IMG/VR virus record: IMGVR_UViG_3300002835_000007
Location: 62,001-126,000 of that record
DNA: 64,000 nt
Reading direction: 5' to 3' (one strand)
The stretch's first letter is position 1. Every line of letters starts with the position of its first letter. Made by a program: the position numbers and the translations under genes. Below are positions 40,069-63,939 of this stretch, in pieces. The notes beneath the pieces are model-generated. The model was not told where the DNA came from. It searched no databases and worked only from the letters and a program-made list of their open reading frames with translations.

Positions 40069-40125
40069 TTTTTTAACGTATGCCAATAAAAAAAAGAGTT
40101 CATTTAATGAACCCTTTTCAGTCGG

Positions 40126-40545
40126 TTAAAGACTTGCACAAGTCGGACCTAACCCACGTTCGATGGATTGTGCGTCCGTTAACGTGCGTCCACAACGTAT
40201 GCAATTGCCCGTATGCATAACTTGAACCTTCTCATCCAACAAGTCGAACTTGCTTTGTTCAACCCTTTCAAGCACCCAACAAATTGCTGTTGCCGATGGC
40301 GAGTTAACCACTTGCCCTTTTTGGTAAATCTTACCCTTGAAATAAGACCCCAAACGAACGAATTTTTGGTACTCTTGTTCAACGCTAATATGCGTGTACC
40401 AATTGCCCTTAAATTTAGAACGAGAGATAGCATACGTGTAGTCTTTGCCCGTAGCAATAGACTTAATAGTGAAATCAGAACCACTATTGTTTTTTTCAGC
40501 CTTGATAACTGAAAAAAGAGCCGAAGATGAAATAATGTGTGACAT
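40126..40545 (-). CDS. DUF6011-like zinc-finger protein
   Basis: CIRCGRTLT...SIERGLGPTC. Confidence 0.75.
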   Translation of the reverse strand: MSHIISSSALFSVIKAEKNNSGSDFTIKSIATGKDYTYAISRSKFKGNWYTHISVEQEYQKFVRLGSYFKGKIYQKGQVVNSPSATAICWVLERVEQSKFDLLDEKVQVMHTGNCIRCGRTLTDAQSIERGLGPTCASL

Positions 40546-40681
40546 AAGGAAAAAATTTAAATGAATAACTTATTACAAAGATAATACTTTTTTTCATTCC
40601 CACAATACCTTAACGAAAAAAAAAATAAAATTATTTTTAATAATTGTTTGCATATATCATTTCTATTATCTATCTTTGTTT

Positions 40682-40756
40682 TGTCAATGATTGATAGTCG
40701 AGACAAGTCGCTAAGCAAAGTGAGAGAGTAGACTCCGACACGTCCATACGTGAACG
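40682..40756 (+). ncRNA. dispersed sRNA-like element copy 12 (inverted)
   Basis: UCGCU-AAGCAA-AGUGA + GA + GAGUAGACUCC; promoter TTTG-N20-TATCTTTG. Confidence 0.65.
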
Positions 40757-40783
40757 AACTATACTAAATAAAAAAGGGGATTT

Positions 40784-41002
40784 TTAAACCCCCAATTTTT
40801 CAAAGATAGGACGACTAATTTCGTTTCTAATAAGCATAGGTATTAGATACTCAAATAAGTCGTCAGATTCAATCTTTAGACGTTCATACTTAACTTTTGG
40901 TATGTCAGCCCTAACGTCATTTCCAACTTGTTCGGCAAAGAATTTTTCACCTTCCCTAACTAATAGACAATTTCCAACTTGTCTTACAACTACACGTAAC
41001 AT
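40784..41002 (-). CDS. hypothetical protein
   Basis: own minus-strand promoter. Confidence 0.65.
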   Translation of the reverse strand: MLRVVVRQVGNCLLVREGEKFFAEQVGNDVRADIPKVKYERLKIESDDLFEYLIPMLIRNEISRPIFEKLGV

Positions 41003-41132
41003 AAAGAACGATTTTGAATTACCCTACAAAGATAACATTAATTTTGATTCCCACAATACCCTAACCAAAAAAAAATTAATATAAACGAAAAAAGTCCATA
41101 AGGTATAACCCTATGGACAGATTTCTGTACAT

Positions 41133-41456
41133 TTAGTACTCAACTTCAACGTCACGTGCTTGTGCGTGCACGTATTCCAAGAACTTGTCGTCATTCAAGA
41201 CGATAGGTTCGTGCCACACGATTTCGTGTTCGGTATACGTATACCGATACCCCTCGTTAGACTCGTCTTGTAGCAGACGTTTGAAAGCGTTTATTGAGCG
41301 TTCCTCGTCATACATAAGGTAATCAACATTAAGGTTGACTTGAAAGATTTTACCACCTTTCTTTTTCCAATGTTGTGGACATTCCCCTTGACCATCCCAC
41401 GTGTGAGCAGCATAGTTTTCCTCAACTTGTGCGTAAATGTTTACCAATGTTTTCAT
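41133..41456 (-). CDS. conserved phage hypothetical protein
   Basis: Q..ENY.AH.WDG.GECPQ.WK.KGG. Confidence 0.75.
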   Translation of the reverse strand: MKTLVNIYAQVEENYAAHTWDGQGECPQHWKKKGGKIFQVNLNVDYLMYDEERSINAFKRLLQDESNEGYRYTYTEHEIVWHEPIVLNDDKFLEYVHAQARDVEVEY

Positions 41457-41658
41457 AACAAAAAAGTATTAAAAAATAAATAAAAAAAGAACTAACGCCC
41501 AACCGAAGTACATATCATATCCTCAATTGAACAATACAAAGATAGGGATAAATTTTAAATAACCAAAACTTTTTTCACTTTTTTTTTTCAAAGTTATTAA
41601 CACTAAATTGTTAATAACTTTTTTTAAAAAAAAACTTGCATATTAAAAAAATAAAACC

Positions 41659-41709
41659 CAGGTTGGAGTCTACTCTTCCATTCCCACGGCACGTACCTTA
41701 ATTGTACAC
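41659..41709 (-). ncRNA. dispersed sRNA-like element copy 13
   Basis: CCGU-GGGA-AUGG + core; promoter CTTG-N20-TATATTTG. Confidence 0.6.
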
Positions 41710-41873
41710 TACAAATATAGGAAGGATAAATTTAATATGCAAGCAAAAGTTATTAACAATTCAATTTTTTTTATTGTTAATAACTTTGAGTGAATTATTT
41801 TTAATTTTTTGTTGCAATAGTCAATTTAATGTGTAACTTTGTCAAAGTTATTAATCATTAAAACTTTTAAATT

Positions 41874-42458
41874 ATGAAAACGCAAACACAAAACAACAAC
41901 GTAGTAGCAGTAGGTAAAACAATCAAAGGTACAACCTTTGTAGGTACTACATATAGAAACGCACAAGGCGAATTAAGTAAACAACTTATCGTTAGTGGTA
42001 TTAGTTACGAAAATTGTTTAATGAATGATTTTAATTCATTACAAGCAAATCAAACTACTATCTTTGAAAAGTTGGAAAAAACTTATTCTATCGACTTAAT
42101 TACTTTGGCTTACAATAACCTTTTTTCAAGCCTTGAAAAAAGATTATCTAACCCAGAAACGAAAGCAAAATTATTGGCTGAAAAAGATAGTACAATAGTA
42201 CGTTCACAAGCCCAAATTGAGGCTTATACGCACCTTGCAAAAGGTATTAAAGTACATAACGAAACAAACGAAATTCATGTGTTTGGTTTAGTAGTTAAAA
42301 AACGTGTTTTGGAAGCAGTCGAATACAAAGAAACGAAAAGCAAAGAATTGACAATCGTACAAAACAAAATCAAAAAACTTTGCGACTTTAAGCAAAGCAA
42401 ATATAAAACTTTCATCTTTCAGCAAGGCGAATTTAAAATGCAAGGATTGACACTATAA
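41874..42458 (+). CDS. conserved phage hypothetical protein
   Basis: 194 aa; followed by GAAA-loop terminator at about 42462-42491. Confidence 0.75.
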   Translation: MKTQTQNNNVVAVGKTIKGTTFVGTTYRNAQGELSKQLIVSGISYENCLMNDFNSLQANQTTIFEKLEKTYSIDLITLAYNNLFSSLEKRLSNPETKAKLLAEKDSTIVRSQAQIEAYTHLAKGIKVHNETNEIHVFGLVVKKRVLEAVEYKETKSKELTIVQNKIKKLCDFKQSKYKTFIFQQGEFKMQGLTL

Positions 42459-42742
42459 CAAAAGAAAGTACCGAAAGGTACTTTTTTTTTTGCCTATACA
42501 TTTTTAATTACAAAACACGTTTTAATTAGTTTTAAGACGTGTTTTTGTTGTTAGGTATACAAAGATATTACTTTTAATAGAAAGTTGCTTAAAACGGCTA
42601 ATTACCCCCTATACGGCAGTCCTCCCTATGTACCCCCTCCTTGTAACCCCCCTCCGTTAGCCCTCCCGTATGTTGGGTGTATGTGGGGCTTGATGCTGTT
42701 CACGAAATTTTTTTTGGGAAAATTTTTTGACTTTATTTTTAG

Positions 42743-42851
42743 GACCCCTTATTTAAAAAAATTTTTTTCTGGAAAAAGTTGCAACAAAAAAAGGAGACCC
42801 CCTATTTTAAAAAAATTTTTTTCGGAAAAAGTTGCAGCAAAAAAAAAGGAG
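42743..42851. repeat. two tandem ~53 bp A/T-tract repeats
   Basis: GACCCC..ATTT.AAAAAAATTTTTTTC(T)GGAAAAAGTTGCA.CAAAAAAAGGA repeated twice. Confidence 0.8.
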
Positions 42852-43529
42852 TTAGTCGTTTTTAAAATTATAGTCATATAGGGTTTTTATAAACGCTAGG
42901 AAATCTGCTTCTGTAAGTTCATTTTTCATAGTGTTAACAATTGACGCAACAAGGACCACGTTATCTTTTGTGTATCCTTTTTTAGAATCTATTCTATCAA
43001 TAGAGAGTCCGTATATATTCATTTTAGTATCTTGTGAACCTACGGATGATATGTCAAGAATCTGGCCGCTATATTTGCATTTATAATTTTGTTCTATTAG
43101 TAGGTTGTTTATAAAGTCTTCATCTATATCGAAGTTAAGGTCTTTTTTTTTGGCTCTATGTTTTGCTGACAGTATTCTACATTTAATGATATTATTTTTA
43201 ACCCATTTATGTTGTCTTATAAGATATTTTTTTTTATCTATGTCGGATAGTTTTTGGTATCTTACAGAAGAGTCTTTATTGATGCAGTCTTTGCATTTTT
43301 TCTTATTATCTTTTTTAAATTTATTAATATCATTTTGACCACAGATTAAGCAGTTGCAATATAGTTTTGTTGAGTTTTTTAATATTTTATTTAGGATGGA
43401 TGATGTTATATTATATTTTTCCGTTAAGTCTTTTTTAAGGGCTTCGGTATTAACATATTCATCTATGATAACATTTTTAAGTTTATCGTTAATAAATCTA
43501 TTATTTTTTCCATCGAATAAAATTTCCAT
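42852..43529 (-). CDS. HNH-type (homing-like) endonuclease
   Basis: RAKKK.L.FDI...Q..KC.YSG...SIDRIDS.KGY..DNV.LV....N.MK. Confidence 0.75.
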   Translation of the reverse strand: MEILFDGKNNRFINDKLKNVIIDEYVNTEALKKDLTEKYNITSSILNKILKNSTKLYCNCLICGQNDINKFKKDNKKKCKDCINKDSSVRYQKLSDIDKKKYLIRQHKWVKNNIIKCRILSAKHRAKKKDLNFDIDEDFINNLLIEQNYKCKYSGQILDISSVGSQDTKMNIYGLSIDRIDSKKGYTKDNVVLVASIVNTMKNELTEADFLAFIKTLYDYNFKND

Positions 43530-45175: not shown

Positions 45176-46399
45176 ATGAAAAACAAAAAAGAACAAAGTG
45201 AGTTTACTAGTACGTTATTGCATAAAGATGTTAATAATGTAAAAAGGGATAGATTGGTTGATATCTACAAGCAAGACAAACAAAAAGCCAGAATCATATT
45301 TGAGAATGCTAATAGAGACGGATACAGTGAGAATACTATTTGGTTGTTTGAATATCCCAACAAAGATTTTAGAATTGTTTCATTTACCAACAATATTAGT
45401 TTTTCAAAAAACAATATTATGTATAGACGTAATAAGACGAACCATATCTTCATATATAAACATGAGACCAAATCTTTTTACTTTAAACTTAATGGTCTTA
45501 TGAAACCGTTGACTGTTGCAAACTTTAATGCGTTTACCAATTGGAAAGTTAGAGAACATTTTATTAATAAATTTGGTTGGTTGCGAAATGCTTTAGATGT
45601 TACTAGTTGTTATTCATTAACGTTGACAACCATTAACAAGAAGAAGTTATTTAACAAGGAAAAATTAATAAAGCATGTATATGGTGTTAACCATAATGTT
45701 GCAAAAGTTTTGGATATTGCTATTAAGGAAAATGATAATATAAAGTTTCTTTGGAAGCAGTATAAGCATTTGTTTATAAACTTAGATAAACTAACGCCAG
45801 AATTTTTTAAAAACCATTTAATTTATGACACATGTAGATTTGCTCAATCTTTTGGTGAGAAAATAAATTGTGCATGGAAAGCGAAAAGGATTAAACAGTT
45901 TCATGACATGTTGTATAAAAAACACATTGATGTGATATTAGAGTTTGAACCGTTATCGATGTTATCAAACAAAACGGTTTATTTAGATTTTGCTGCTTTT
46001 TCTAATTATCAGATTCTTAAAACAAATCATGATTTAATTTCTGAGGGTAAGAAACAAAGTCATTGTGTTGGTACATATGGACCACAAGTAAACAATGGTA
46101 CATGTTCTATATTATCTATTGGTCAGTACACGTTAGATTTAAGGTATGGAATTCAATGGAATAGACCTAAATTAAATATGATGGATTCAGAAAAAACATT
46201 ATTTATAAATCAGTTTAGAGGTTATGGCAACTGTGACGCACCAAAAGAATTGTATGACGAGGTTAACGCATATTTAGATGAGTTTAACAAAGATATTAAA
46301 AAGTATGAAGAAGGTTTTAAGAAAGAGTGTATGAATGTTTTCCATGATAGTTTACCAAATCCATTGGGTGAGTTTATTGAAGATGATTTACCGTTTTAA
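45176..46399 (+). CDS. PcfJ-like domain protein
   Basis: HD, L..EG..Q.HCV.TY, TL, Q.RG..N in C-terminal domain. Confidence 0.7.
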   Translation: MKNKKEQSEFTSTLLHKDVNNVKRDRLVDIYKQDKQKARIIFENANRDGYSENTIWLFEYPNKDFRIVSFTNNISFSKNNIMYRRNKTNHIFIYKHETKSFYFKLNGLMKPLTVANFNAFTNWKVREHFINKFGWLRNALDVTSCYSLTLTTINKKKLFNKEKLIKHVYGVNHNVAKVLDIAIKENDNIKFLWKQYKHLFINLDKLTPEFFKNHLIYDTCRFAQSFGEKINCAWKAKRIKQFHDMLYKKHIDVILEFEPLSMLSNKTVYLDFAAFSNYQILKTNHDLISEGKKQSHCVGTYGPQVNNGTCSILSIGQYTLDLRYGIQWNRPKLNMMDSEKTLFINQFRGYGNCDAPKELYDEVNAYLDEFNKDIKKYEEGFKKECMNVFHDSLPNPLGEFIEDDLPF

Positions 46400-46402
46400 A
46401 AT

Positions 46403-46431
46403 AAAAAAGGGGTTTTGCAACCCCTTTTTTT
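46403..46431. terminator. bidirectional terminator
   Basis: AAAAAAGGGGTT-ttgc-AACCCCTTTTTT between convergent genes. Confidence 0.85.
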
Positions 46432-47551
46432 ATTTTTTAAATTTAGCACTTAAAGTTCTAAACTCTCGTTTTTCATCATTTGTTAGTTCTTGACCACGTT
46501 CTTGTTTTCTAACTAAGTCTTGGTAAGTTCTATATCTTCTTTTATCTTTATCTGATAATGAGCTAATATCGAAATCTGGTTCATTTCTAAGACTAATTAA
46601 ATCTCTTTCACCTTTTTTGATATCATTGTTTTGTAAATATTGTTCTGCGTTTTCTGAATCTGATTGTAAGAAAGTTTTTATTTCTTCTTCGGATGGTTCT
46701 TTACCTACTTTTTGTTTATATGCGGTTCTGAAATCCATTCTTAATTTTTGTTTTTTTCTTTCTGGGTCAGCAGACATTTGTTGGTAAGAATCAGTATTTT
46801 TGGCATCACCATATGATGTATATGCATCAAAACCAGGGGTATTAATAATAACGTAATCCAATATCATTTCACCATAAATCAAATAAGCTTTTATTATTGC
46901 ATCTGAAGCTGGAGAACCAGGCACATCATAATCTACGTCAACAACACCATCTAACCCTTTATCATTTATTAAATTAATAATATTTTGTTTTAATTTTGAA
47001 TCTTTAATTCCATATATAAAACTAACTAATTTTTGGTTATCTTGTAGGTATTCAGTTTCTTTTGAAAATTTTCTACCGCTACTTGTTTTAATAACAGAAT
47101 TATCGTCAGCTGATTGTAAACCTTTTCTAGTAATAGCAAAATTATCTCTAGGTTCATTGGCTGACCCAAGTGGTCCGTTAGTGTTAAGACTGTGTTCGAT
47201 ACCTCTATTAGCCATAATATTAAACCACATGTAACTAGCGTTTTTTCTAATAAAACCTATTTTATCATTTTTTTTATTATTAGCAGCAGATACAGTATTA
47301 GTTCCCAATCTTGCGTCACCACGTGGTGAAATTAATATTGGTAATACTGCTTGACCTTCATATTCACTATCAAAATATTGTTTAACATTATCATCTACAT
47401 CAGAGTTAGGACCATACATTTCTTGTGCTTTAGCAATCTTAAACATTGTTTTAAAAACGTCAGACATACTAGAGTCAAAATCAGATTTGGCTTCTAACAT
47501 ATTAAAGTTTTTTCTAAGTGATTCTTTTATTAGTTTTTTAATATTAACCAT
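46430..47551 (-). CDS. hypothetical protein, putative virion protein
   Basis: leader IKKLIKESL...MLE; late-type promoter at 47565-47573. Confidence 0.65.
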   Translation of the reverse strand: MVNIKKLIKESLRKNFNMLEAKSDFDSSMSDVFKTMFKIAKAQEMYGPNSDVDDNVKQYFDSEYEGQAVLPILISPRGDARLGTNTVSAANNKKNDKIGFIRKNASYMWFNIMANRGIEHSLNTNGPLGSANEPRDNFAITRKGLQSADDNSVIKTSSGRKFSKETEYLQDNQKLVSFIYGIKDSKLKQNIINLINDKGLDGVVDVDYDVPGSPASDAIIKAYLIYGEMILDYVIINTPGFDAYTSYGDAKNTDSYQQMSADPERKKQKLRMDFRTAYKQKVGKEPSEEEIKTFLQSDSENAEQYLQNNDIKKGERDLISLRNEPDFDISSLSDKDKRRYRTYQDLVRKQERGQELTNDEKREFRTLSAKFKK

Positions 47552-55223: not shown

Positions 55224-55730
55224 ATGGAATGGAAAAGAAACGACAAATTAATCGATGAACCAATAATTGAATATTTGGAAAAAGTTATCGAAGAAGAATT
55301 AACTAAAGGTTATTCAATGAGAGTATCAATTGGTACTGACTCACAAAAAGCTGAAAAAGGAACTTATAAGTTCGCTACTGTTATCCTTATTAAAACAAGT
55401 GAGGATTTAGGTGGTGTTGTTGTTGGACGTGGTGGTTTAATCATTTCGTCAACATATTATCATGCCTTTAAACAGACTAATAAAGAGTTGGTTAATGAGA
55501 GAATGGTATATGAAGTTGGTAAGTCGGTTGAAGTCGCTTATGGATTAGCACCGTTGTTAGATTTATATGATATTCCATTAGAAATACACGCTGACATTAA
55601 TCCAGACCCAACACATGAGTCTAACAAAGCTTTACAACAAGCTGTTGGTTATATTTTAGGTATGGGTTATGAGTTCAAGGTTAAACCAGATGCATGGGCT
55701 GCTTCTTCTGCTGCCGATAAAAAATGTTAA
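55224..55730 (+). CDS. RNase H-like YkuK (DUF458) family protein
   Basis: IGTDSQ, FAT, EV.KS, EIHADIN, KPDA.AAS.AAD. Confidence 0.85.
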   Translation: MEWKRNDKLIDEPIIEYLEKVIEEELTKGYSMRVSIGTDSQKAEKGTYKFATVILIKTSEDLGGVVVGRGGLIISSTYYHAFKQTNKELVNERMVYEVGKSVEVAYGLAPLLDLYDIPLEIHADINPDPTHESNKALQQAVGYILGMGYEFKVKPDAWAASSAADKKC

Positions 55731-55784
55731 TTAAATCTTTATATTTTGAAACATTATTTATATATTTATACTAAAATGGTTATT

Positions 55785-55940
55785 ATGAAAAAATATGGGT
55801 TAACGAATAAATCTGGAGATGTTATAAATACAATTTCAGCTAATAATTTTGAAGAAGCTATAGAATTCTTTTGTTTTAGAAAAAAATTTGATAGGAACAC
55901 ATTATTGCATTTATTTGATGTGGTTGAAATTGAAAATTAA
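55785..55940 (+). CDS. hypothetical protein
   Basis: start moved to MKKYG. Confidence 0.55.
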   Translation: MKKYGLTNKSGDVINTISANNFEEAIEFFCFRKKFDRNTLLHLFDVVEIEN

Positions 55941-56016
55941 TTTTTAATAAATTGTGTTTTTTAAAAAATAACACATATTTATAAATAAAAATAAGATTTA
56001 ATTAAAACTTAGAAAA

Positions 56017-56223
56017 ATGTCAAACGGTAAAAAAGTTGTTGCTATTAAAGAATCTAAATTAATAGATTTGATAGATAATATTGTTAATGAAGCTGTTGCT
56101 ATCCAAAAACAAGAATGGATTCAAGAAAACGCTAAAGCTAACGAGAATAAAAATGCTATCTTAGAAGGTAAAATTGCTAAGTTAGAAGCTAAATTCAAAG
56201 CTTTAACTGAAAGTAAAAAATAA
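56017..56223 (+). CDS. small coiled-coil protein, putative virion protein
   Basis: KKVVAIKESKLIDLIDNIVNE leader; late-type promoter. Confidence 0.65.
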   Translation: MSNGKKVVAIKESKLIDLIDNIVNEAVAIQKQEWIQENAKANENKNAILEGKIAKLEAKFKALTESKK

Positions 56224-56314
56224 TATCTATCGTTTAGTAAAGAAATTAAAATTAGGTTGGGAAATAATTCTCAACCTTTTTTTGTTTTGAGTTCATATTT
56301 ATTTTAAAAGTTTT

Positions 56315-57004
56315 ATGAATTCAATTATTGAAAAGTTACAAAGAGAAGAAAAACCATTAACATCAGTCGTAGAAAAAGATGAGTTTATTGTTGCAAGCGA
56401 AACAGCATTTGATTGTTTGTTTGATGGAACTTCAACATTTTACCCATGGAAATTACCTTCTACCCTACCCAAACAATTTAAGATAGGTGTTATTGTAGGT
56501 TCTAGTGGTTCTGGTAAATCAACTTTGTTAAAACATTTTGGTTTGGAAGAACAACCAACATGGGATGACAATAAATCAATCATATCACATTTTGAAAATC
56601 CAGAGGACGGAATCAATAGATTAAGTTCAGTTGGATTCAATTCTATACCATCATGGTATAAACCATATAGTGTATTATCCAACGGAGAGAAATTTAGGGC
56701 TGATTTAGCTCGTAAGATAACATCAAATGCTGTCATAGATGAATACACCTCGGTAGTTGATAGAAATGTTGCTAGAGCGGCTTCTGTGGCTTTATCTAGA
56801 TACGTTAAAAATAATGACGTAACAAATATTGTAATATCCACATGTCATATGGATGTGGTCGAATGGCTGGAGCCAGATTGGGTTATTAATACGGACACGG
56901 GTGAACTGATGGACGGTTTTTTTTTGTCCGCCCAGAAATCAATGTCAAAGTATATCGCACAACAAATGATGGTTGGGGAATGTTTAAAGACCATCACTAT
57001 TTAG
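56315..57004 (+). CDS. ABC-type ATPase (N-terminal part of ATPase-GNAT fusion)
   Basis: Walker A GSSGSGKST, signature LSNGE, Walker B VIDEYTS, switch H. Confidence 0.85.
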   Translation: MNSIIEKLQREEKPLTSVVEKDEFIVASETAFDCLFDGTSTFYPWKLPSTLPKQFKIGVIVGSSGSGKSTLLKHFGLEEQPTWDDNKSIISHFENPEDGINRLSSVGFNSIPSWYKPYSVLSNGEKFRADLARKITSNAVIDEYTSVVDRNVARAASVALSRYVKNNDVTNIVISTCHMDVVEWLEPDWVINTDTGELMDGFFLSAQKSMSKYIAQQMMVGECLKTITI

Positions 57005-57408
57005 ATTCAAGTATAAATAAAGCGTCTAGATGTTATGTTGCAGTATGGGAAGATACGGTTATTGGTTTTTTATCATCAATAACTATGCCTAGTGGTACAT
57101 TAAAAAACGCATGGAGGGGTCATAGAGTCGTTGTGCTGCCAGATTTTCAAGGAATGGGTATAGGTGTTAGATTTATTGAAGCAGTCGCTCAAATACACTT
57201 AGATGAAAGTCATAGATTTTTTTCTAGAAGTTCACACCCTAAGATGTATGATTATATGATTAAATCGAATAAATGGAAACCAACATCTAAGAATAAGAAA
57301 TTAAGGACTGACGTAACGCATGATAAGTTATTCAACAATCATTACGTTGATAATAAAAGAATATGTGGCAGTTTTGAATATATTGGTGAAATAAAAAAGG
57401 AGGTTTAA
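56917..57408 (+). CDS. GNAT-like acetyltransferase, reached by a -1 shift at the T9 run (first ATG 56980)
   Basis: -1 frame reads FFVRPEINVKVYR...W.MFKDHHYL; R.VVLPDFQGMGIG acetyl-CoA motif. Confidence 0.75.
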   Translation, partial: FFFVRPEINVKVYRTTNDGWGMFKDHHYLDSSINKASRCYVAVWEDTVIGFLSSITMPSGTLKNAWRGHRVVVLPDFQGMGIGVRFIEAVAQIHLDESHRFFSRSSHPKMYDYMIKSNKWKPTSKNKKLRTDVTHDKLFNNHYVDNKRICGSFEYIGEIKKEV

Positions 57409-57419
57409 AACCTCCTTTT
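57394..57419. terminator. bidirectional terminator
   Basis: AAAAGGAGGTT-taa-AACCTCCTTTT between convergent genes. Confidence 0.8.
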
Positions 57420-57424
57420 CTTAT

Positions 57425-58870
57425 TTAGTTACCATAATATTTTATTGCGTCTTGAGCTGTTATACCTATTCCTTTTTCTTGCATTTCTTTATTGAAATCT
57501 TGTTGTTGTATTGGTCCTTGTTTGATGTAATTTATTGCATTTTTAAAATACTCTGAATCTCTAATAGTTTTTAAAGGACTTACACCATAAGGTTGTTTAC
57601 TAGATTTAGCAACTGTATAATCAGCAATTTTATCACCTTTATTAAAAGAAGCGTTGCTTCTCATTTCTTCTTTTTTTGTTTGACCAAAACCATGTATTGC
57701 TAATTCTATTTCAGATGGTTTTTCCTTGAACGCCCAACCACCACTAGCATTACCTTGTTGGTCTTTAAATAATTTAGCCTTAACAGTTTTAGTTTGACCA
57801 TTATTTGCAGTAACTGTTATTAATTTAATACCTTGTTGTTCTTCTTCTGGAGTTAAAACAGTGTTTTCATCAGCAGCGTCTACAACAGTATATTCAATAC
57901 CATGTACGTTTGTGTTATAACCATGTACATCACCTTCTTTAGCACATGATTGAACTAAACCACTTGCAGCGATTAAACACGCAAAAACAAATTCTCTAGC
58001 ACCTTCTTCTAAATTAGGGTTTAATAATTTTTCTTCTCCATTAGGGTATATTAATTTTACTGGTACATCGTCAACCATATCTGCTGGTACACCAGCTTTC
58101 ATTAATTCATTATCTAAATTTTTTGGTTCGTTTGGTTGTAGATTTTCTCTAAGCAATTTTTTAATAAAACTTTTTGTTTCATTTGTTTTTTTACCCCAAT
58201 ACTTTTTAGCTTCTTTTTCCATTTTTTCAATTCTATCATAATAATCTGGAAATTCAGATACATGGTCTTCAGCAATTTCAGTTTGTTTTTCTTCATCACT
58301 AGTGTGCTCAGATTCAATCTTTTTTCCTTTTTTTATTTGGTCTTTAACCATTTTTGTTGTAACATCAAATTTATCAGCAATTTCTTTTGGTGTTAGCTTA
58401 TCAGCTTTACCACCTTTTAATTTGTTTGATTCGTTAAGTTTTTTCTTATCCATAATTTTTTTTATTAAATTGAAGGTGATTATAAACACTGAACCACCAG
58501 GCAGCATAAACACAGCACCATACCCTAAACTTTTTAAAAGTTTTTTAAGGTCATCACCTATTTTTGTTTTTTGTTCTTTTGTTAATTCTTGACCAGTTTT
58601 GATTGATTTAACAATTGTCTTTACTGCATCTGAAGTGTTAACTACATTATCTTTGATTGAATCTTTAATGTTAACTATCGCAGCATACATTTTATCTCTA
58701 CCTACAGCGATTAAACTTTCATTTAGTTCTTCTAATTCTTCTGTTTTAACATTAGCGTGAAGAGCACCTAAATAATCATTAACATCACCAGTAGTACAAC
58801 CAACTTTTTTTTCGCTACCTTTTTTATAAACGCAATCTTTATCACCAACTTCTCTATGTGTATATGGCAT
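57425..58870 (-). CDS. multi-module putative virion protein with DUF5661-like domain
   Basis: KGGKAD...G..IE.EHT.D...EIA.DH..E.PDYY; modules separated by LNE/LLRE linkers. Confidence 0.6.
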   Translation of the reverse strand: MPYTHREVGDKDCVYKKGSEKKVGCTTGDVNDYLGALHANVKTEELEELNESLIAVGRDKMYAAIVNIKDSIKDNVVNTSDAVKTIVKSIKTGQELTKEQKTKIGDDLKKLLKSLGYGAVFMLPGGSVFIITFNLIKKIMDKKKLNESNKLKGGKADKLTPKEIADKFDVTTKMVKDQIKKGKKIESEHTSDEEKQTEIAEDHVSEFPDYYDRIEKMEKEAKKYWGKKTNETKSFIKKLLRENLQPNEPKNLDNELMKAGVPADMVDDVPVKLIYPNGEEKLLNPNLEEGAREFVFACLIAASGLVQSCAKEGDVHGYNTNVHGIEYTVVDAADENTVLTPEEEQQGIKLITVTANNGQTKTVKAKLFKDQQGNASGGWAFKEKPSEIELAIHGFGQTKKEEMRSNASFNKGDKIADYTVAKSSKQPYGVSPLKTIRDSEYFKNAINYIKQGPIQQQDFNKEMQEKGIGITAQDAIKYYGN

Positions 58871-59325: not shown

Positions 59326-61839
59326 TTATTTTGTTTTTTTAGTCTTTGCTTGCTTTATGACCAATTCTTCTTTCTTCTCATCGAATGAAACTTCTATGGT
59401 TTCACCCTCTTTGAAATTTTCATTTAGAATCTCATCGGCTACTGTGTCCTCAACATAATGTTGGATTGCTCTAGCTAATGGTCTAGCACCATATGCTTCG
59501 TCATAACCTTGTCTTCCTAAGAATTCAATAGCTTCTTTGGTCACATTTAATTTATAACCCATTTCGATTACACGTTCTTCAAGTTTTTTGATTTCCAAGT
59601 AAATAATTTTATGGATATCTTCTTGTGATAAACTTTTGAATACGATAGCTTCATCAATACGATTTAAAAACTCTGGTTTGAATTTTTTCTTTAATGCTTT
59701 TTCAATAATTGAACGAGCTCTATTTTCTTCACCAACAATTGATGCTGCTGTTTCAAACCCCATTGTTTGACCAAATGTTGCAACTTCTTTAACACCAATG
59801 TTTGATGTCATAATAATAAGAGAGTTTTTAAAGTTAATTTTTCTACCTAAACCATCTGTTAGATGTCCTTCATCTAATAATTGAAGTAAAATATTGAAAA
59901 CATCTTCATGTGCTTTTTCAATCTCGTCAAATAAAATAACACAATGTGGTTTACGTCTAACTTTTTCAGTTAACTGACCACCTTGGTCATAACCAACGTA
60001 ACCTGGAGGTGGACCTACTAATCTAGATACCGAATGTTTCTCCATGTATTCTGACATGTCAATTCTAATTAAAGATTCTGCGTCACCATAAACTTGCTCT
60101 GCTAAAAATTTAGCTAACAACGTTTTACCGACACCAGTAGGACCTAAGAAGATAAATGAACCAACTGGTTTGTTTTTATCTTTAATTCCAATTCTATTTC
60201 TTTTGATTGCTTTAATAACTTTAGTTACTGCTTCATCTTGACCAATAACTTTACCCATTAACTCTTTATCTAAGTTCATTAATCTTTTACTTTCTTGTGT
60301 AGATATTTTTGTTAACGGAATACCAGTCATCATTGAAACCACCTCAGAAATAATTTCAACACCAACTTCAGTAACTTTTTTATCTAAAGTTGATTGCCAT
60401 TCAGCCATTACTTTTTCTAACTCTTCAGTGATTTTTTTCTCATCATCACGAAGTTTAGCTGCTTCTTCATATTTTTGTTTTTTTACAACATCTTTTTTCT
60501 TTTCGTTGATTTCTTTAATTTTTGATTCTAATTCTTTAATGTTTTCTGGTTTTTCAACACCAACATTAGTTGTTGCACCAGCTTCATCCAATACATCAAT
60601 AGCTTTATCTGGCATAGACCTATCCATGATATATCTAGCAGATAATTTAACACATTCTTCAATTGCTTCGTCAGTGTATTTTACTTTATGATGATTTTCA
60701 TATTTTTCTTTGATATTGTTTAAGATAACTTTTGTTTCTTCCAATGTTGGTTCTTCAACAAGTACTTGTTGGAAACGTCTAGTCAACGCACCATCTTTCT
60801 CAATGTTTTCTCTGTATTCATCTAATGTTGTTGCACCAATTACTTGCAGCTCACCACGTGCTAAAGCTGGTTTAAAGATGTTTGAAGCATCTAGTGAACC
60901 AGAAGCATTACCAGCACCTACAATTGTATGTAACTCATCTATAAACAAGACAACATCTGGATTTGCTTTACATTCTTCTAGAACAGCTTTCATTCTTTCT
61001 TCAAACTGTCCACGATATTTTGTACCAGCAACAATTGACGCTAAGTCTAAACTATAAATTTTCTTGTTGATTAATGTTCTAGGTGCGTTACCGTCTTTAA
61101 TAAGTTGAGCAAGTCCTTCAACAATAGATGTTTTACCAACACCAGGCTCACCTATCAAAACTGGATTATTCTTTTTTCTTCTAGATAAAATTTGAGATAC
61201 TCTTTTGATTTCTTTTTCACGACCAACAACTGGGTCAATTTCACCTTTTTCAACAGCTTTAGATACATCTCTACAGAAATTATCTAACACTGGAGTTTTA
61301 CTTTTGTTTTCAACAATTTTACTTTTCTTTCTAAAACTTTCAGTTTCGTCATTATCATCATCAATTGAACTGTTAGTAAACTTATCACCAGATGGTGAAT
61401 CTAACTTAACAATTCGTCTAAAATCGTAATAGTTTAACCCAATTTTGCTTAAAAATTCAGAAATATTATTTTTATTGTTCAACATAACTAATAGTATATG
61501 TTGCGTGTCAATCATGTTATGATTTAACTCTTCACATTGTTTTTCTAATTCTTTGATTAACGTTTTTGTTTCATCTGAAAATGGTAACGTTTTTCTAGTG
61601 CTAGTATAACCTCTAGGTGTTAAATCATTTTTTCTAATAAAATCAGAAAACTTATCATATAAATCTATAACATCAAGTTTAAAATGGTCTTTTAACATTT
61701 TTGTACACGTGTTATCATTGTCTGCTAATATAGATAAAAGGATATGTTCTGGTCTTACTTTAACATCTTCAAAAGCTTTAGCTTCTCCAGCTGATTTGCT
61801 CATAATCTGTTTTACTTTTGGGTAAACTTCTCTATTCAT
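59326..61839 (-). CDS. clpC: ATP-dependent Clp protease ATP-binding subunit (ClpC-like)
   Basis: Clp-N repeats, GEPGVGKT, UVR-like YEEAAKLRD, GPTGVGKT, GYVGY, MGF loop, GARPL. Confidence 0.92.
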   Translation of the reverse strand: MNREVYPKVKQIMSKSAGEAKAFEDVKVRPEHILLSILADNDNTCTKMLKDHFKLDVIDLYDKFSDFIRKNDLTPRGYTSTRKTLPFSDETKTLIKELEKQCEELNHNMIDTQHILLVMLNNKNNISEFLSKIGLNYYDFRRIVKLDSPSGDKFTNSSIDDDNDETESFRKKSKIVENKSKTPVLDNFCRDVSKAVEKGEIDPVVGREKEIKRVSQILSRRKKNNPVLIGEPGVGKTSIVEGLAQLIKDGNAPRTLINKKIYSLDLASIVAGTKYRGQFEERMKAVLEECKANPDVVLFIDELHTIVGAGNASGSLDASNIFKPALARGELQVIGATTLDEYRENIEKDGALTRRFQQVLVEEPTLEETKVILNNIKEKYENHHKVKYTDEAIEECVKLSARYIMDRSMPDKAIDVLDEAGATTNVGVEKPENIKELESKIKEINEKKKDVVKKQKYEEAAKLRDDEKKITEELEKVMAEWQSTLDKKVTEVGVEIISEVVSMMTGIPLTKISTQESKRLMNLDKELMGKVIGQDEAVTKVIKAIKRNRIGIKDKNKPVGSFIFLGPTGVGKTLLAKFLAEQVYGDAESLIRIDMSEYMEKHSVSRLVGPPPGYVGYDQGGQLTEKVRRKPHCVILFDEIEKAHEDVFNILLQLLDEGHLTDGLGRKINFKNSLIIMTSNIGVKEVATFGQTMGFETAASIVGEENRARSIIEKALKKKFKPEFLNRIDEAIVFKSLSQEDIHKIIYLEIKKLEERVIEMGYKLNVTKEAIEFLGRQGYDEAYGARPLARAIQHYVEDTVADEILNENFKEGETIEVSFDEKKEELVIKQAKTKKTK

Positions 61840-62207: not shown

Positions 62208-62675
62208 ATGATTTTAAAAAGAAAAGAAAAAGACGGAATCGTAAAAGCAATTTATTCGTCATCAAACATTTGTGCATCGGTTTACAACACTGTTACAAAT
62301 GAATTAACAATTATTTTCAGTAATGGAGGCCAATACAAATACGTTGATGTTGCAGCAACTGATTACATGCGTTTTGAAACAGCAGATAGTCAAGGTTCAG
62401 TGTTAAACACAAACATCAAAAAATACACTAGCAGCAAATTGGATAATGTTGACACAACTGAAATATTAAAAGAAGTAGAACAAATTAAAGATTTAGAAGT
62501 ATCACAGATTACACCAGATGCTGCTGTAAAAGAAATGTTACAAAACATGAGTGATATTATCAGCAACTATTTGAAAAATGGTAATGTAACAACAGCTTCA
62601 TTAACTGGATTAAAAGATAAAATTTCAACTTTTGAAAAAGTTAAAAATTTAAAACCAGAAATTGTCCATGAATAA
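62208..62675 (+). CDS. KTSC domain protein
   Basis: SSNI...Y......L.I.F..G..Y.Y.DV...Y..F..A.SQG. Confidence 0.75.
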   Translation: MILKRKEKDGIVKAIYSSSNICASVYNTVTNELTIIFSNGGQYKYVDVAATDYMRFETADSQGSVLNTNIKKYTSSKLDNVDTTEILKEVEQIKDLEVSQITPDAAVKEMLQNMSDIISNYLKNGNVTTASLTGLKDKISTFEKVKNLKPEIVHE

Positions 62676-63939
62676 TCTAGATAAAACTTATACAGATTTA
62701 TTAAAAGACATTTTAGAAAATGGTACTCAGAAAGGTGATAGAACTGGAACGGGTACCATTTCTGTCTTTGGGAGACAAATTCGTCACAAAATGAGTGATG
62801 GTTTTCCACTTCTTACAACAAAGAAGATGTATATGAAAGGTATTATAACTGAACTTATATGGTTCTTACGTGGTGATACCAACATCAAATACCTTTTGGA
62901 TAATGATTGTCATATTTGGAATGGTGATGCTTATAAGAACTATTGGAATAGTATAGAAACCTCAGAATATGATGGATTTGGGCCTACATCAATTAAGTTA
63001 CCAACATTAACACAAGAAGAATTCATCAACAAAATCAAAACAGATGATAAGTTTGCTAATAAGTGGGGTGATTTAGGTCCAGTATATGGTAAGCAATGGA
63101 GAAGTTGGGGTGGTATAGATACAGACTCATTTTTAAATACAGATAATATTGAAGACCCATTATTAGGTGGTAGAGGTTTATTTTTTAAAGAATATGAGAT
63201 AGACCAAATCGCAAACCTAATCAATGACCTTAAAAACAATCCAGATTCAAGACGTTTGATGGTAAACGCTTGGAATGTTGGAGAATTAGATTCAATGGTA
63301 CTTCCACCTTGTCATTATGGATTTCAAGTTTATACAAGAGAATTGAGTTTGGAAGAAAGAAAAGTTATTGCTAAAAAAGTATTACCAATATTAAATACAT
63401 TTTTAGGAAACCAAAGTGAAGAAGGTTGGATAGAACAATGTGAAAAATTAAATATCCCAACCAGAGCAATTTCATTAATGTGGAATCAACGTTCAGTGGA
63501 TACATTCTTAGGTTTACCATTCAACATTGCTTCTTATGGATTGTTATTGGAAATCATTGCAAAAGAAGTTAATATGGTTCCAGATGAATTAATAGGGAAC
63601 TTGGGTGATGTTCACTTGTATTCAAATCATGTTGAACAAGCCATGGAACAGATTGGTAGATACTTGAGAGTTGATGAAAGAGTTTGTATGTGTTATGAGA
63701 ATCCTAAATTGGATTTAAGTAGATTACAAGAAGGAATGAGTGATGAAAAATTCACAAAAGTGTGTGATGAGTTTGAAATACCCAAAAGAACTAGAGAACC
63801 ATATCCATTACCTACACTAAATATTAAACTTCATTTTAATAATGAACCATCATTTGTTCCAGAACAATGGTTGATTGATGATTTTGAAATAATAGGTTAT
63901 AAAGCCCACCCAACTATAAAAGCACCATTATCAAATTAA
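62668..63939 (+). CDS. thyA: thymidylate synthase
   Basis: DRTGTGT, FPLLTTKK, ELIWFL.G, LGPVYGKQWR, SRR, LPPCH, QRSVD..LG.PFN, HLY.NH. Confidence 0.95.
   Translation: MNNLDKTYTDLLKDILENGTQKGDRTGTGTISVFGRQIRHKMSDGFPLLTTKKMYMKGIITELIWFLRGDTNIKYLLDNDCHIWNGDAYKNYWNSIETSEYDGFGPTSIKLPTLTQEEFINKIKTDDKFANKWGDLGPVYGKQWRSWGGIDTDSFLNTDNIEDPLLGGRGLFFKEYEIDQIANLINDLKNNPDSRRLMVNAWNVGELDSMVLPPCHYGFQVYTRELSLEERKVIAKKVLPILNTFLGNQSEEGWIEQCEKLNIPTRAISLMWNQRSVDTFLGLPFNIASYGLLLEIIAKEVNMVPDELIGNLGDVHLYSNHVEQAMEQIGRYLRVDERVCMCYENPKLDLSRLQEGMSDEKFTKVCDEFEIPKRTREPYPLPTLNIKLHFNNEPSFVPEQWLIDDFEIIGYKAHPTIKAPLSN

What the first reader, a model, noticed from the sequence alone, without database searches (positions are those of the whole stretch)
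56315..57408. ABC-ATPase and GNAT joined by a probable programmed -1 frameshift at a T9 run
Seen: GAC GGT TTT TTT TTG (T9 at 56917-56925). The 0 frame ends 26 codons later in a nondescript tail. The -1 frame is open from the T run and reads FFVRPEINVKVYR...WGMFKDHHYL into the acetyltransferase, so coding-like sequence begins well before ATG 56980. T TTT TTT is a slippery heptamer and T9 also permits transcriptional slippage. From recall, ABC-ATPase/acetyltransferase fusions have been proposed as Mom-like phage DNA-modifying enzymes. Inference: the ratio of ATPase to fusion is regulated, possibly linked to the motif avoidance above.
Basis: partly seen in the sequence, partly recalled or inferred. 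Interest (0 to 1): 0.6.

Follow-up and report, generated by a model that had tools for sequence, protein, structure and literature searches.

The report
Conserved frame-shifting site joining ATPase and acetyltransferase
A run of nine T's in this lake phage is a conserved recoding site, not an error: one gene makes a short ATPase and, after a slip of one base, a longer ATPase-acetyltransferase fusion, and related phages, including Streptococcus and Lactococcus phages, have the same break.

Summary
T9 lies at 56917-56925. The ABC-ATPase frame (56315-57004) stops 26 codons later. The -1 frame is open from 56905 and encodes a complete GNAT domain that ends at 57408.

T9 is not an assembly error. 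Independent contigs from other studies bridge it without an indel. All 31 related viral loci whose GNAT part is 61% or more identical have the same 0 to -1 break, and the 120 closest protein clusters are 225-255 aa, so none is a fusion.

The slip site is conserved while the flanking codons drift. Of 24 distinct sequences, 21 have T9, one has T8, and two have A_AAT_TTT in phase.

More distant relatives (43-49% identity) are in-frame fusions, and one PHROG profile runs continuously across the junction.

A second clade has a -1 break at the same linker. It includes Streptococcus, Lactococcus and Oenococcus phages and several metagenome bins. Its sites are A_AAG_GGC or A7-A10 runs; Enterococcus phage 9184, which branches apart, has A_AAA_AAG.

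A start at ATG 56980 would lose GNAT strand beta1 and most of helix alpha1.

Best reading: programmed recoding that yields a 229-aa ATPase and a 364-aa fusion. Whether RNA polymerase or the ribosome slips is unresolved, and no RNA data were available. I found no report of this recoding. The family's predicted role in DNA-base acylation is untested.

The parts
56254..56277 (+). Terminator-like hairpin of the upstream gene. The ABC-GNAT gene appears to be its own transcription unit.
   Evidence: 10-pair stem followed by a T tract.
56315..57004 (+). ORF A in the 0 frame, 229 aa. It is a complete ABC-type ATPase domain (residues 1-203) followed by a 26-codon tail read in the 0 frame after the T run.
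   Evidence: PF00005; phrog_11143 positions 39-194; MetN-type nucleotide-binding domains.
56498..56524 (+). Walker A motif (GSSGSGKST, residues 62-70).
   Evidence: Read from the translation. Pfam ABC_tran matches residues 56-82. These residues lie in the predicted dimer interface.
56675..56689 (+). ABC signature motif (LSNGE, residues 121-125).
   Evidence: translation; invariant L-S-x-G in alignment A4. It contacts Walker A of the other copy in the predicted dimer.
56729..56743 (+). Walker B motif (AVIDE, residues 139-143). The switch histidine H178 is at 56846-56848.
   Evidence: translation; D-E and C-H are invariant in A4.
56917..56925 (+). T9 slip site. T_TTT_TTT is in phase with the 0 frame (GG[T TTT TTT] TTG). 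It encodes the inter-domain linker (FFF).
   Evidence: T9 in 21 of 24 distinct clade sequences, T8 in one, and A_AAT_TTT in two. There is no indel in bridging contigs from other runs.
56926..57408 (+). The -1 frame part of the fusion, a complete GNAT acetyltransferase domain. The frame is open from 56905 and the stop is TAA at 57406-57408. The fusion product is 364 aa.
   Evidence: PF00583, PF13508; phrog_11143 positions 200-354; alignments; model, pLDDT 84; Foldseek matches to whole GNAT domains.
56944..56961 (+). GNAT strand beta1 (VKVYRT). It lies upstream of the first ATG in this frame.
   Evidence: strand at residues 10-15 of the 163-aa part. The RPxIxhxh motif is conserved with in-frame fusions.
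56980..56982 (+). ATG, the first canonical start in the -1 frame and Met22 of the GNAT part. It lies inside helix alpha1.
   Evidence: It is conserved as ATG in 23 of 24 clade sequences and is GTG in one. No conserved Shine-Dalgarno sequence precedes it.
57002..57004 (+). TAA stop of the 0 frame. It is created by the conserved HHYL codons of the GNAT frame (..TAT TTA read as ..ATT TAA).
   Evidence: The same coincidence occurs in most of the related out-of-frame loci whose junctions were printed.
57148..57165 (+). GNAT acetyl-CoA-binding loop (QGMGIG).
   Evidence: Q78, G79, G81 and G83 are invariant or nearly invariant in A2/A3. That this is the CoA loop rests on established knowledge of GNAT motif A.
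57395..57419 (+). Terminator-like hairpin overlapping the stop codon, shared with the convergent gene at 57425-58870.
   Evidence: 11-pair stem. One search shows it is palindromic and that a similar copy lies at window 46399-46435.

Best explanation
One gene gives two proteins by programmed recoding at the T9 run. Standard decoding yields a 229-aa stand-alone ABC-type ATPase: the full nucleotide-binding domain plus a 26-residue out-of-frame tail. In a fraction of expression events the reading frame changes by a net -1 inside the run, and translation continues into a complete GNAT domain. This gives a 364-aa ATPase-GNAT fusion with the same architecture as the in-frame relatives (junction ..ELMDGFFFVRPEINVK..).

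Two routes give the identical fusion protein. In the first, RNA polymerase slips on T9 and adds one U. In the second, the ribosome slips -1 on U_UUU_UUU. For this window I lean towards transcriptional slippage as the main route (about 0.5 of total probability), with ribosomal -1 frameshifting at about 0.35. In relatives that carry A_AAT_TTT, A_AAA_AAG or A_AAG_GGC, ribosomal frameshifting is the only plausible route.

Shown here: the frames, the homology across the junction, the conservation of the break and of the run, and the position of the site in the inter-domain linker.

Inferred: that slippage actually occurs, how efficient it is, and that the short and long forms assemble through the canonical ABC head-to-tail dimer, so that the ratio sets how many GNAT domains each ATPase dimer carries.

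Inferred from the literature only: that the enzyme acylates a nucleic-acid base.
For: (1) T9 is not an error. Contigs from other studies bridge the run without an indel: X9 record 25 has 0 differences, and X13 record 13 is a variant strain with 3 SNPs and 0 gaps. No T10 contig was reported in 4 runs.

(2) The break is conserved. All 31 related viral loci whose GNAT part is 61% or more identical have the 0 to -1 break, and all 32 loci at 43-49% identity are in-frame fusions. The 120 best protein clusters (76-100% identity) are 225-255 aa and none is about 364 aa.

(3) The slip site is conserved against a background of synonymous drift. Of 24 distinct sequences, 21 have T9, one has T8 and keeps T_TTT_TTT, and two have A_AAT_TTT in phase. 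In L041 and L042 the -1 frame opens only one codon before the run.

(4) Homology is continuous across the junction. phrog_11143 (357 positions) matches ORF A up to G201 at profile position 194, and the -1 frame product from R9 at profile position 200. Alignments A2-A4 show the RPxIxhxh..W..F..HHYL block upstream of ATG 56980.

(5) Structure. The 163-aa -1 frame part folds as a whole GNAT domain (pLDDT 84, pTM 0.80). Strand beta1 is at residues 10-15 and Met22 lies inside helix alpha1. Foldseek aligns about 155-165 columns to complete GNAT domains. In the in-frame relative L047 the homologous position falls in the coil between the ATPase domain and beta1.

(6) The break recurs elsewhere in the family. 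On the tree, clade I has 27 rows, all -1. Clade II has 11 of 15 rows at -1, and these include Streptococcus, Lactococcus and Oenococcus phages. The -1 label needs only 6 changes on the tree, against about 35 when labels are shuffled. The sites sit just before the RP motif: AC[A AAG GGC] in Oenococcus and A7-A10 runs in L130, L131, L155 and L143. Enterococcus phage 9184, which sits outside both clades on a long branch, has GC[A AAA AAG]. A homopolymer of 7 or more bases lies in the linker in 36 of 50 -1 loci, against 4 of 104 in-frame loci.

(7) Points favouring the polymerase. Runs of 9 A's or T's are the known substrate for bacterial transcriptional slippage (PMC5009743). In clade II, A9/A10 runs occur in -1, +1 and in-frame members alike. 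No downstream stimulatory structure was detected.

(8) Dimer. The ATPase domain is predicted to form the canonical dimer, with Walker A against the signature motif. The score is 0.80 and the best control 0.00. That mark was reached by 21 of 30 proteins solved as pairs of one chain and by 0 of 23 solved as single chains. The runs agree in at least 100% of contacts and the partner pLDDT is at least 90. The counts hold only roughly because ATP rode along, and the pass may reflect the model's memory of solved ABC dimers.
Against: There is no RNA or protein evidence. No RNA run holds the locus, and only assembled contigs, not raw reads, could be laid. Minor T10 variants and mRNA heterogeneity therefore could not be measured.

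No conserved stimulatory RNA structure or upstream Shine-Dalgarno-like element was found. The consensus fold is -5.5 kcal/mol with no covarying pairs, and the window's own fold has z = +1.0.

In E. coli test constructs U_UUU_UUU is less shift-prone than A_AAA_AAG (PMC5009743).

In the 54 nt between the run and ATG 56980, both frames are about equally conserved at the amino-acid level (0.62 against 0.63), so this short stretch alone does not show which frame is read.

ATG 56980 is itself conserved (23 of 24 sequences, GTG in the other), which leaves room for an additional independently started product.
Confidence: 0.85

Rival explanations
1. These are two independent genes. The ATPase ORF ends at 57004, and a shortened acetyltransferase starts at ATG 56980, possibly by termination-reinitiation coupling because the 0-frame stop lies 22 nt downstream. 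No recoding occurs.
For: ATG 56980 is conserved in 23 of 24 clade sequences and is GTG in the other one, whereas in-frame relatives have variable residues at that position. In L087/L088 the -1 ORF begins with TTG just before the RRP motif and there is no slippery site, so a true split seems to exist in at least one lineage.
Against: A product started at ATG 56980 would lack strand beta1 and most of helix alpha1 of the GNAT fold. The 21 codons upstream of the ATG are homologous to in-frame fusions and are open in all clade members. The invariant T run and its replacement by in-phase heptamers would have no explanation. No conserved Shine-Dalgarno sequence precedes the ATG.
Confidence: 0.07
2. 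The site is a DNA-level phase-variation (contingency) locus. The tract toggles between T9 (off) and T10 (fusion on) through replication slippage, and assemblies happen to show the majority state.
For: Homopolymer tracts are classic contingency loci (established knowledge). In clade II, relatives with A9/A10 tracts occur in -1, +1 and in-frame states, so tract length has changed over evolutionary time.
Against: No T10 was seen in 31 related loci, in 120 protein clusters or in 4 independent runs. A switching locus should show both states among so many independent assemblies. Relatives with A_AAT_TTT have no tract that could switch.
Confidence: 0.04
3. The break is an assembly or sequencing error. 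The real genome has T10 and a plain in-frame fusion gene.
For: Homopolymers are error-prone on some platforms, and T10 would give exactly the architecture of the in-frame relatives.
Against: The same T9 occurs in independent assemblies from different studies and years, including a variant strain. It also occurs in dozens of diverged relatives. Cultured phage and prophage records from many different strains and studies have the same kind of break.
Confidence: 0.03
4. The gene is a decaying pseudogene. A frameshift mutation killed the fusion, and the GNAT part is a remnant that is no longer translated.
For: Sporadic breaks of this kind do exist in the family. Examples are the in-frame TGA in Tenacibaculum phage pT24, the second break in Javan420, and the misplaced break in L107, a long-read assembly.
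Against: The GNAT frame stays open and 61-100% identical, with all catalytic-loop residues kept, across a clade whose ATPase part has diverged to 62% identity. An untranslated remnant would have accumulated stops.
Confidence: 0.01

Closest known systems
Phage lambda tail assembly chaperone G/GT (-1 ribosomal frameshift)
   Same: A phage gene whose short product and C-terminally extended trans-frame product are both made (PMC5009743). From my own knowledge, not checked here: the shift is conserved across very diverse phages while the slippery sequence itself varies. The ABC-GNAT family shows the same pattern.
   Different: The protein family and role are unrelated (enzyme versus assembly chaperone). 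Here many lineages use long homopolymers (T9, A9-A10) rather than heptamers. Many family members are plain in-frame fusions, which is not the case for G/GT.
dnaX tau/gamma (E. coli A_AAA_AAG ribosomal frameshift; Thermus thermophilus transcriptional slippage on an A run)
   Same: Recoding decides whether an ATPase carries its C-terminal domains. Different lineages reach the same two-product outcome through the ribosome or through RNA polymerase (PMC5009743). The same mixture is suggested here by heptamers in some lineages and 9-10-base runs in others.
   Different: In dnaX the long form is the 0-frame product and slippage truncates it. In this window the short form is the 0-frame product and slippage extends it. 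Only the in-frame A10 members of clade II (L116, L120, L129) would behave like dnaX.
Shigella flexneri mxiE and spa13 (transcriptional slippage)
   Same: Slippage by RNA polymerase on a homopolymer joins overlapping ORFs into an extended product, in about 25-30% of products for spa13 (PMC5009743). From memory, the mxiE site is also a run of nine T's.
   Different: These are bacterial virulence-plasmid genes with unrelated functions. Slippage there is shown experimentally; here it is only inferred.
ABC ATPase-GNAT predicted DNA-base acyltransferase (Iyer et al. 2013, as cited in PMC7824862; JGI name 'ABC-type ATPase with predicted acetyltransferase domain'; phrog_11143)
   Same: It is the same protein family. 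Both halves of the window's gene match phrog_11143 end to end, and the closest database proteins carry the JGI name. The jumbo-phage paper names Tenacibaculum phage pT24 as a carrier, and pT24 is among the homologs found here.
   Different: The family is described as a fusion protein, and I found no mention of recoding. The activity is a prediction only. The window's phage lacks the ParB_N and ASCH neighbours seen in Firmicute phages.
TmcA / NAT10 (ATPase-coupled GNAT that makes N4-acetylcytidine in RNA)
   Same: The working principle may be similar: a GNAT acetyltransferase whose action on a nucleic-acid base is coupled to an ATPase domain (established knowledge). In Streptococcus phages the downstream gene is an ASCH-domain protein, a family shown to hydrolyse N4-acetylcytidine (PMC6972931).
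   Different: The ATPase here is ABC-type, not helicase-type. No sequence match to TmcA was seen in the Pfam or NCBIfam scans. This is an analogy, not membership.
Phage Mu Mom
   Same: Both are phage GNAT-superfamily enzymes linked to acyl modification of DNA bases (PMC7824862).
   Different: Mom has no ATPase. The window's GNAT matches only the general Pfam models Acetyltransf_1, 7 and 10, and its structural neighbours are generic GNATs.

Membership tests
Programmed -1 ribosomal frameshift cassette | Slippery heptamer X_XXY_YYZ in phase with the 0 frame | tested here: met
   GG[T TTT TTT] TTG. This is weak as evidence on its own, because any T9 contains an in-phase heptamer. It is informative in the relatives: A_AAT_TTT (L037, L038, L040), A_AAA_AAG (Enterococcus 9184) and A_AAG_GGC (Oenococcus) are all in phase.
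Programmed -1 ribosomal frameshift cassette | An overlapping -1 ORF whose product is homologous to the continuation of in-frame relatives | tested here: met
   The phrog_11143 profile is continuous across the junction; alignments A2-A4.
Programmed -1 ribosomal frameshift cassette | The break and the shift site are conserved among diverged homologs | tested here: met
   31 of 31 clade loci have the break. The 120 closest protein clusters are all short. On the tree the -1 state is clustered and long-lived.
Programmed -1 ribosomal frameshift cassette | Stimulatory element: a downstream hairpin or pseudoknot, or an upstream Shine-Dalgarno-like sequence | tested here: not met
   RNAalifold on 24 sequences gives -5.5 kcal/mol with 0 covarying pairs. 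The window's downstream 85 nt fold at -10 kcal/mol with z = +1.0. Not all natural sites have a stimulator, so this lowers the claim but does not exclude it.
Programmed -1 ribosomal frameshift cassette | The trans-frame protein is detected | not testable with these tools
   No proteomic or ribosome-profiling data are available for this uncultured phage.
Programmed transcriptional slippage | Homopolymeric A or T run of about 9 or more bases in the coding strand | tested here: met
   T9 in the window and in 21 of 24 distinct clade sequences; A9-A10 in L130, L143 and L105. The threshold is taken from PMC5009743.
Programmed transcriptional slippage | Run length maintained beyond what protein coding requires | tested here: met
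   In the T-run sequences, 65 of 66 Phe codons in the run are TTT, against 83% TTT genome-wide. The sequences are related, so this is suggestive rather than a formal test.
Programmed transcriptional slippage | mRNA population heterogeneous in run length while the DNA is uniform | not testable with these tools
   No RNA run holds the locus, and only contigs could be laid.
ABC ATPase-GNAT family (phrog_11143; 'ABC-type ATPase with predicted acetyltransferase domain') | N-terminal ABC-type nucleotide-binding domain with Walker A, signature, Walker B and switch His | tested here: met
   PF00005 is over its cut-off. The motifs were read and are invariant in A4. PDB sequence matches are MetN-type domains.
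ABC ATPase-GNAT family (phrog_11143; 'ABC-type ATPase with predicted acetyltransferase domain') | C-terminal GNAT fold with the Q/RxxGxG CoA loop | tested here: met
   PF00583 and PF13508 are over their cut-offs; model with pLDDT 84; Foldseek finds GNATs at E = 1e-6; QGxGxG is invariant.
ABC ATPase-GNAT family (phrog_11143; 'ABC-type ATPase with predicted acetyltransferase domain') | Both domains in one polypeptide | tested here: inconclusive
   The DNA encodes them in two frames. A single polypeptide requires the inferred slip.
ABC ATPase-GNAT family (phrog_11143; 'ABC-type ATPase with predicted acetyltransferase domain') | ATP-dependent acylation of a DNA base (the predicted activity) | not testable with these tools
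   This is a prediction quoted in PMC7824862. The original paper is not held.
Mom family | Sequence or profile match to Mom-type GNAT domains | tested here: not met
   The Pfam and PHROG scans return only general acetyltransferase models and phrog_11143.

The most novel reading that the evidence does not exclude
The ABC|GNAT linker is an ancient, family-wide recoding switch comparable in spread to the tail-chaperone G/GT frameshift. It is maintained in at least two large clades, including prophages of Streptococcus pyogenes and the dairy phage P335. Lineages interchange ribosomal heptamers and polymerase-slippage homopolymers, and even in-frame A10 members make two products. The purpose would be to fix the stoichiometry of an ATPase dimer that carries fewer than two acyltransferase domains, for a still unknown nucleic-acid base modification.
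Probability: 0.35. Interest if true: 0.75.

Novelty: new member of a known kind. Interest (0 to 1): 0.6.

Why it matters
Recoding sites conserved across many phage lineages are few; the tail-chaperone G/GT frameshift is the classic example. This looks like another. It sits in an enzyme family predicted to modify DNA bases, and it occurs in cultured, tractable systems: Streptococcus pyogenes prophages such as 315.4, Lactococcus phage P335, Oenococcus phages and Enterococcus phage 9184.

It also has an annotation consequence. Many database entries are split into an 'ABC transporter ATP-binding protein' or 'putative ABC iron siderophore transporter' plus a truncated 'hypothetical protein' or GNAT, and none of the phage records I inspected joins the two.

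If the short-to-long ratio matters, the family offers a natural comparison of ribosomal and transcriptional slippage serving one function. It also gives a handle for finding out what the ATPase-coupled acetyltransferase does.

Tried and rejected
- Downstream stimulatory RNA: there was no conserved structure and no covariation.
- Codon-position entropy and amino-acid identity in the 54 nt between the run and ATG 56980 did not separate the two frames. I rely on homology and structure instead.
- T9 abundance is not above chance, so the run alone is no evidence.
- NCBIfam and PADLOC gave only generic ABC or P-loop matches and no defence-system assignment.
- Foldseek gave only generic GNAT neighbours and no functional clue.
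- No ASCH or ParB_N gene is present in the window's own 206-kb record, which is 58% complete. The neighbourhood seen in Firmicute phages therefore does not carry over.
- There are no tRNA genes in the window.
- Seven literature searches and term look-ups in the 2016 recoding review (only its first 300,000 of 449,034 characters are held) found no report of a frameshift in this family. Iyer et al. 2013 (PMC3763556) is not held.
- Only assembled contigs, not raw reads or RNA runs, were available. T9/T10 read counts and mRNA heterogeneity could not be measured. Unitig breaks near the run in X11 and X16 do not fall where a T9/T10 polymorphism would place them, and I attribute them to strain SNPs (inference).
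- The window's 364-aa fusion could not be folded as one chain, because it has no single reference. I folded its GNAT part and an in-frame relative instead.
- For the Streptococcus/Lactococcus group I could not identify a canonical heptamer. Only the conserved nucleotides CAG GTT TTT CAA TTC CCC CAC (T5 and C5 runs) stand out, so the slip site there remains open.
Full report
**Observation.** The window is part of a 205,931-bp IMG/VR virus record from lake water; CheckV estimates it as 58% complete. At 56912-56926 the + strand reads GAC GGT TTT TTT TTG, so nine T's lie at 56917-56925. ORF A starts at ATG 56315 and its frame continues for 26 codons past the run to TAA at 57002-57004, giving 229 aa. 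The -1 frame is closed by TGA at 56902-56904 and is then open to TAA at 57406-57408. Its first canonical start codon is ATG 56980. A T9 by itself is not remarkable in this 29% G+C DNA: there are 19 matches against 31 +/- 9 expected. It is, however, the only one of 42 A/T runs of 8 or more bases that lies inside two overlapping long frames on one strand, and no other long ORF in the window encodes FFF.

**What the two frames encode.** ORF A is an ABC-type nucleotide-binding domain. PF00005 scores above its cut-off, and Walker A, the LSNGE signature, Walker B and the switch His all lie upstream of the run. The -1 frame is a GNAT acetyltransferase (PF00583, PF13508). One phage family profile, phrog_11143 (357 positions), matches both. 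It matches ORF A up to G201 at profile position 194, and the -1 product from R9 at profile position 200. The family profile therefore runs straight through the T run with room for about four residues, which is what G-FFFV-R provides. The closest database proteins carry the JGI name 'ABC-type ATPase with predicted acetyltransferase domain'.

**Is T9 real?** Only Logan contigs could be laid; no raw reads were available. Contigs from other studies bridge the run without any indel. X9 record 25 covers 55500-57825 with 0 differences. X13 record 13 covers 56618-57851 and is a variant strain with 3 SNPs, one of them 4 nt before the run, and 0 gaps. No T10 contig was reported in the four runs. The comparative evidence is stronger. 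The 120 best protein clusters (76-100% identical to ORF A) are 225-255 aa long, even though fusions of about 364 aa were within the search's length range. Of the viral contigs that encode a relative, all 31 loci whose GNAT part is 61% or more identical show the same 0 to -1 arrangement, and all 32 loci at 43-49% identity are uninterrupted fusions. An assembly error cannot produce this pattern.

**The slip site is under selection.** Among 24 distinct clade sequences the flanking codons vary freely (for example GAA CTG ATG GAC against GAA TTA CTT CAC), but the run does not. It is T9 in 21 sequences. It is T8 in L021, which keeps T_TTT_TTT in phase. In L037 and L040 (and in L038, whose junction is identical to L037's) it is replaced by GGA AAT TTT, that is A_AAT_TTT, a canonical heptamer in the correct phase. 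In L041 and L042 the -1 frame opens only one codon before the run, which pins the shift to the run. Within the runs, 65 of 66 Phe codons are TTT, against 83% TTT genome-wide; the sequences are related, so this is suggestive only.

**Why not an independent start at ATG 56980?** The residues between the run and that ATG (RPEINVKVYRTTNDGW) align with the RPxIxhxh..W block of in-frame fusions. The 163-aa -1 frame part folds confidently (pLDDT 84, pTM 0.80) as a complete GNAT. Strand beta1 is at residues 10-15, helix alpha1 is at 17-24, and Met22 (ATG 56980) lies inside alpha1. Foldseek aligns about 155-165 columns to whole GNAT domains. A product started at the ATG would lack beta1 and most of alpha1. 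In the model of the in-frame relative L047 (pLDDT 81), the homologous position lies in the coil between the last ATPase strands and GNAT beta1. The slip site therefore encodes the inter-domain linker. I cannot exclude that the conserved ATG (23 of 24 sequences, GTG in one) also gives a minor third product.

**The same break elsewhere in the family.** Cultured phages show it too. In Streptococcus prophages of S. pyogenes, S. agalactiae, S. dysgalactiae, S. mitis and S. phocae, in Lactococcus phage P335, in Oenococcus phage unk162, in Enterococcus phage 9184 and in Thomasclavelia phage TR-TP1, the GNAT homology lies in the -1 frame relative to the ATPase ORF. In the Streptococcus prophages it starts far upstream of the annotated second ORF. 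Enterococcus 9184 has GC[A AAA AAG] and Oenococcus has AC[A AAG GGC], both in phase. Streptococcus and Lactococcus share conserved nucleotides with T5 and C5 runs but no canonical heptamer. Among 80 loci from bacterial and archaeal genome bins, 69 are clean fusions, 8 are -1, one is +1, one has an in-frame stop, and in one the ATPase part was not found. Four of the -1 loci have A7-A10 runs placed exactly before the RP motif (L130, L131, L155, L143). L105 has A9 but needs a +1 change. L087/L088 have no slippery site, and a TTG opens the -1 ORF, so this may be a genuine split. L107 is broken elsewhere in a long-read assembly and is probably an error. On a FastTree of 135 conceptual proteins, the window's clade together with TR-TP1 and L087/L088 forms a 27-row group that is entirely -1 (support 98). 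A second group of 15 rows holds 11 -1 members, including the Streptococcus, Lactococcus and Oenococcus phages; Enterococcus 9184 sits apart on a long branch. The -1 label needs 6 changes on the tree, against about 35 when labels are shuffled. A homopolymer of 7 or more bases lies in the linker in 36 of 50 -1 loci but in only 4 of 104 in-frame loci. Three of those four are in-frame A10 members of the second group. The broken state is therefore old, clustered and tied to slippery sequence. That is the signature of programmed recoding and not of noise.

**Which machine slips?** Both routes give the same 364-aa protein. Ribosomal -1 frameshifting is favoured by the in-phase heptamers in lineages that lack a long run. 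Transcriptional slippage is favoured, for the run-bearing lineages including this window, by three points:
- Run length is held at nine, the length at which bacterial RNA polymerase is known to slip (PMC5009743).
- No conserved downstream structure is present.
- In the second clade, A9/A10 runs serve -1, +1 and in-frame members alike, which only polymerase slippage can accommodate.

In addition, U_UUU_UUU is reported to be less shift-prone than A_AAA_AAG in E. coli constructs. I therefore lean towards transcriptional slippage for this window, at about 0.5 against 0.35 for the ribosome, and regard the question as open.

**How it may work.** The short product is a complete ABC domain. Two copies with ATP are predicted to form the canonical head-to-tail dimer, with Walker A residues 62-69 against signature residues 120-125 of the partner. 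The score is 0.80 and the best control 0.00. That mark was reached by 21 of 30 proteins solved as pairs of one chain and by 0 of 23 solved as single chains. The runs agree in at least 100% of contacts and the partner pLDDT is at least 90. The counts hold only roughly because ATP rode along, and the pass may reflect the model's memory of solved ABC dimers. It is therefore plausible, but only inferred, that short and long forms co-assemble and that slippage efficiency sets the number of GNAT domains per dimer.

[quoted passage not shown] The original paper is not held. Context in cultured phages fits nucleic-acid metabolism. Streptococcus phages have a ParB_N gene upstream, an ASCH gene downstream and then terminase. 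Other phages have DNA polymerase or nucleoside kinase neighbours. ASCH proteins hydrolyse N4-acetylcytidine (PMC6972931), which hints at cytosine acetylation; this is a lead only. The window's own record has neither ASCH nor ParB_N. Its conserved neighbours are an LRR protein and an RNase H-like protein. The gene sits between two terminator-like hairpins.

**Novelty and verdict.** The mechanism class is well known; lambda G/GT, dnaX, mxiE and IS elements are examples. The protein family is also described. I found no report or annotation of recoding in it, and none of the phage records inspected joins the two ORFs. I rate it a new member of a known kind, well supported by comparative evidence but without any RNA or protein data.

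Noticed in passing
L037:252-2021 (also L038): In this relative the ABC-ATPase ORF is 589 aa because an intein (Hint domain plus LAGLIDADG homing endonuclease) is inserted in its N-terminal part. The same gene also carries the A_AAT_TTT shift site, so it would need both protein splicing and recoding.
   Followed up: partly
L003:1450-1800 (Tenacibaculum phage pT24, NC_049383.1): The family's published jumbo-phage example is not frameshifted. It has an in-frame TGA inside the GNAT domain (..NGVPV*INVISPLP..), and the record annotates two 'ABC transporter ATP-binding' ORFs. Whether this is an error, a pseudogene or a readthrough is unknown.
   Followed up: no
L116, L120, L129 (linker about 70 nt upstream of the HHYL codons): In-frame members of the second clade carry an A10 run (CAA AAA AAA AAT AGA CCA) at the same junction where their out-of-frame sisters have A9/A10. 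If RNA polymerase slips there, these genes would make a truncated ATPase as a by-product, as in Thermus dnaX.
   Followed up: partly
L105:2477-2572 (Prevotellaceae bin): An A9 run lies at the junction, but the GNAT frame is +1 rather than -1 relative to the ATPase. This is the only +1 case among about 150 loci. It is compatible with a one-base deletion by polymerase slippage or with an assembly error.
   Followed up: no
L079 (Streptococcus phage Javan420, MK448933.1), about 2306-2339: A second frame break lies inside the GNAT part, in addition to the conserved junction break (two tblastn pieces in different frames). It is probably a mutation or a sequencing error.
   Followed up: no
window 57395-57419 and 46399-46435: A palindromic, terminator-like hairpin of about 38 nt (AAAAGGAGGTTT..AAACCTCCTTTT) sits between convergent genes at both places, and the two copies are about 84% alike. 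It appears to be a repeated bidirectional terminator motif in this phage.
   Followed up: no
window 39391-43235: Thirteen of the window's 15 A/T runs of 9 or more bases fall in about 4 kb that has few long open frames, although G+C there is the highest in the window (0.34 at 40-42 kb). No tRNA genes were found. The nature of this stretch is unexplained.
   Followed up: no
window 59326-61839 (-) and 62662-63939 (+): The phage encodes a full-length ClpB/ClpA-type double-AAA chaperone (837 aa). It also encodes a 425-aa thymidylate-synthase homolog whose Pfam match is split into two stretches over residues 8-336, which suggests an insertion.
   Followed up: no
L087/L088 (Endomicrobiaceae and unclassified bins), about 1572-1678 in L087: These sisters of the window's clade have the -1 arrangement with no slippery sequence. 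The -1 ORF opens with TTG just before the RRP motif and overlaps the ATPase ORF by 106 nt. The fusion may have become two separately translated genes in this lineage.
   Followed up: no
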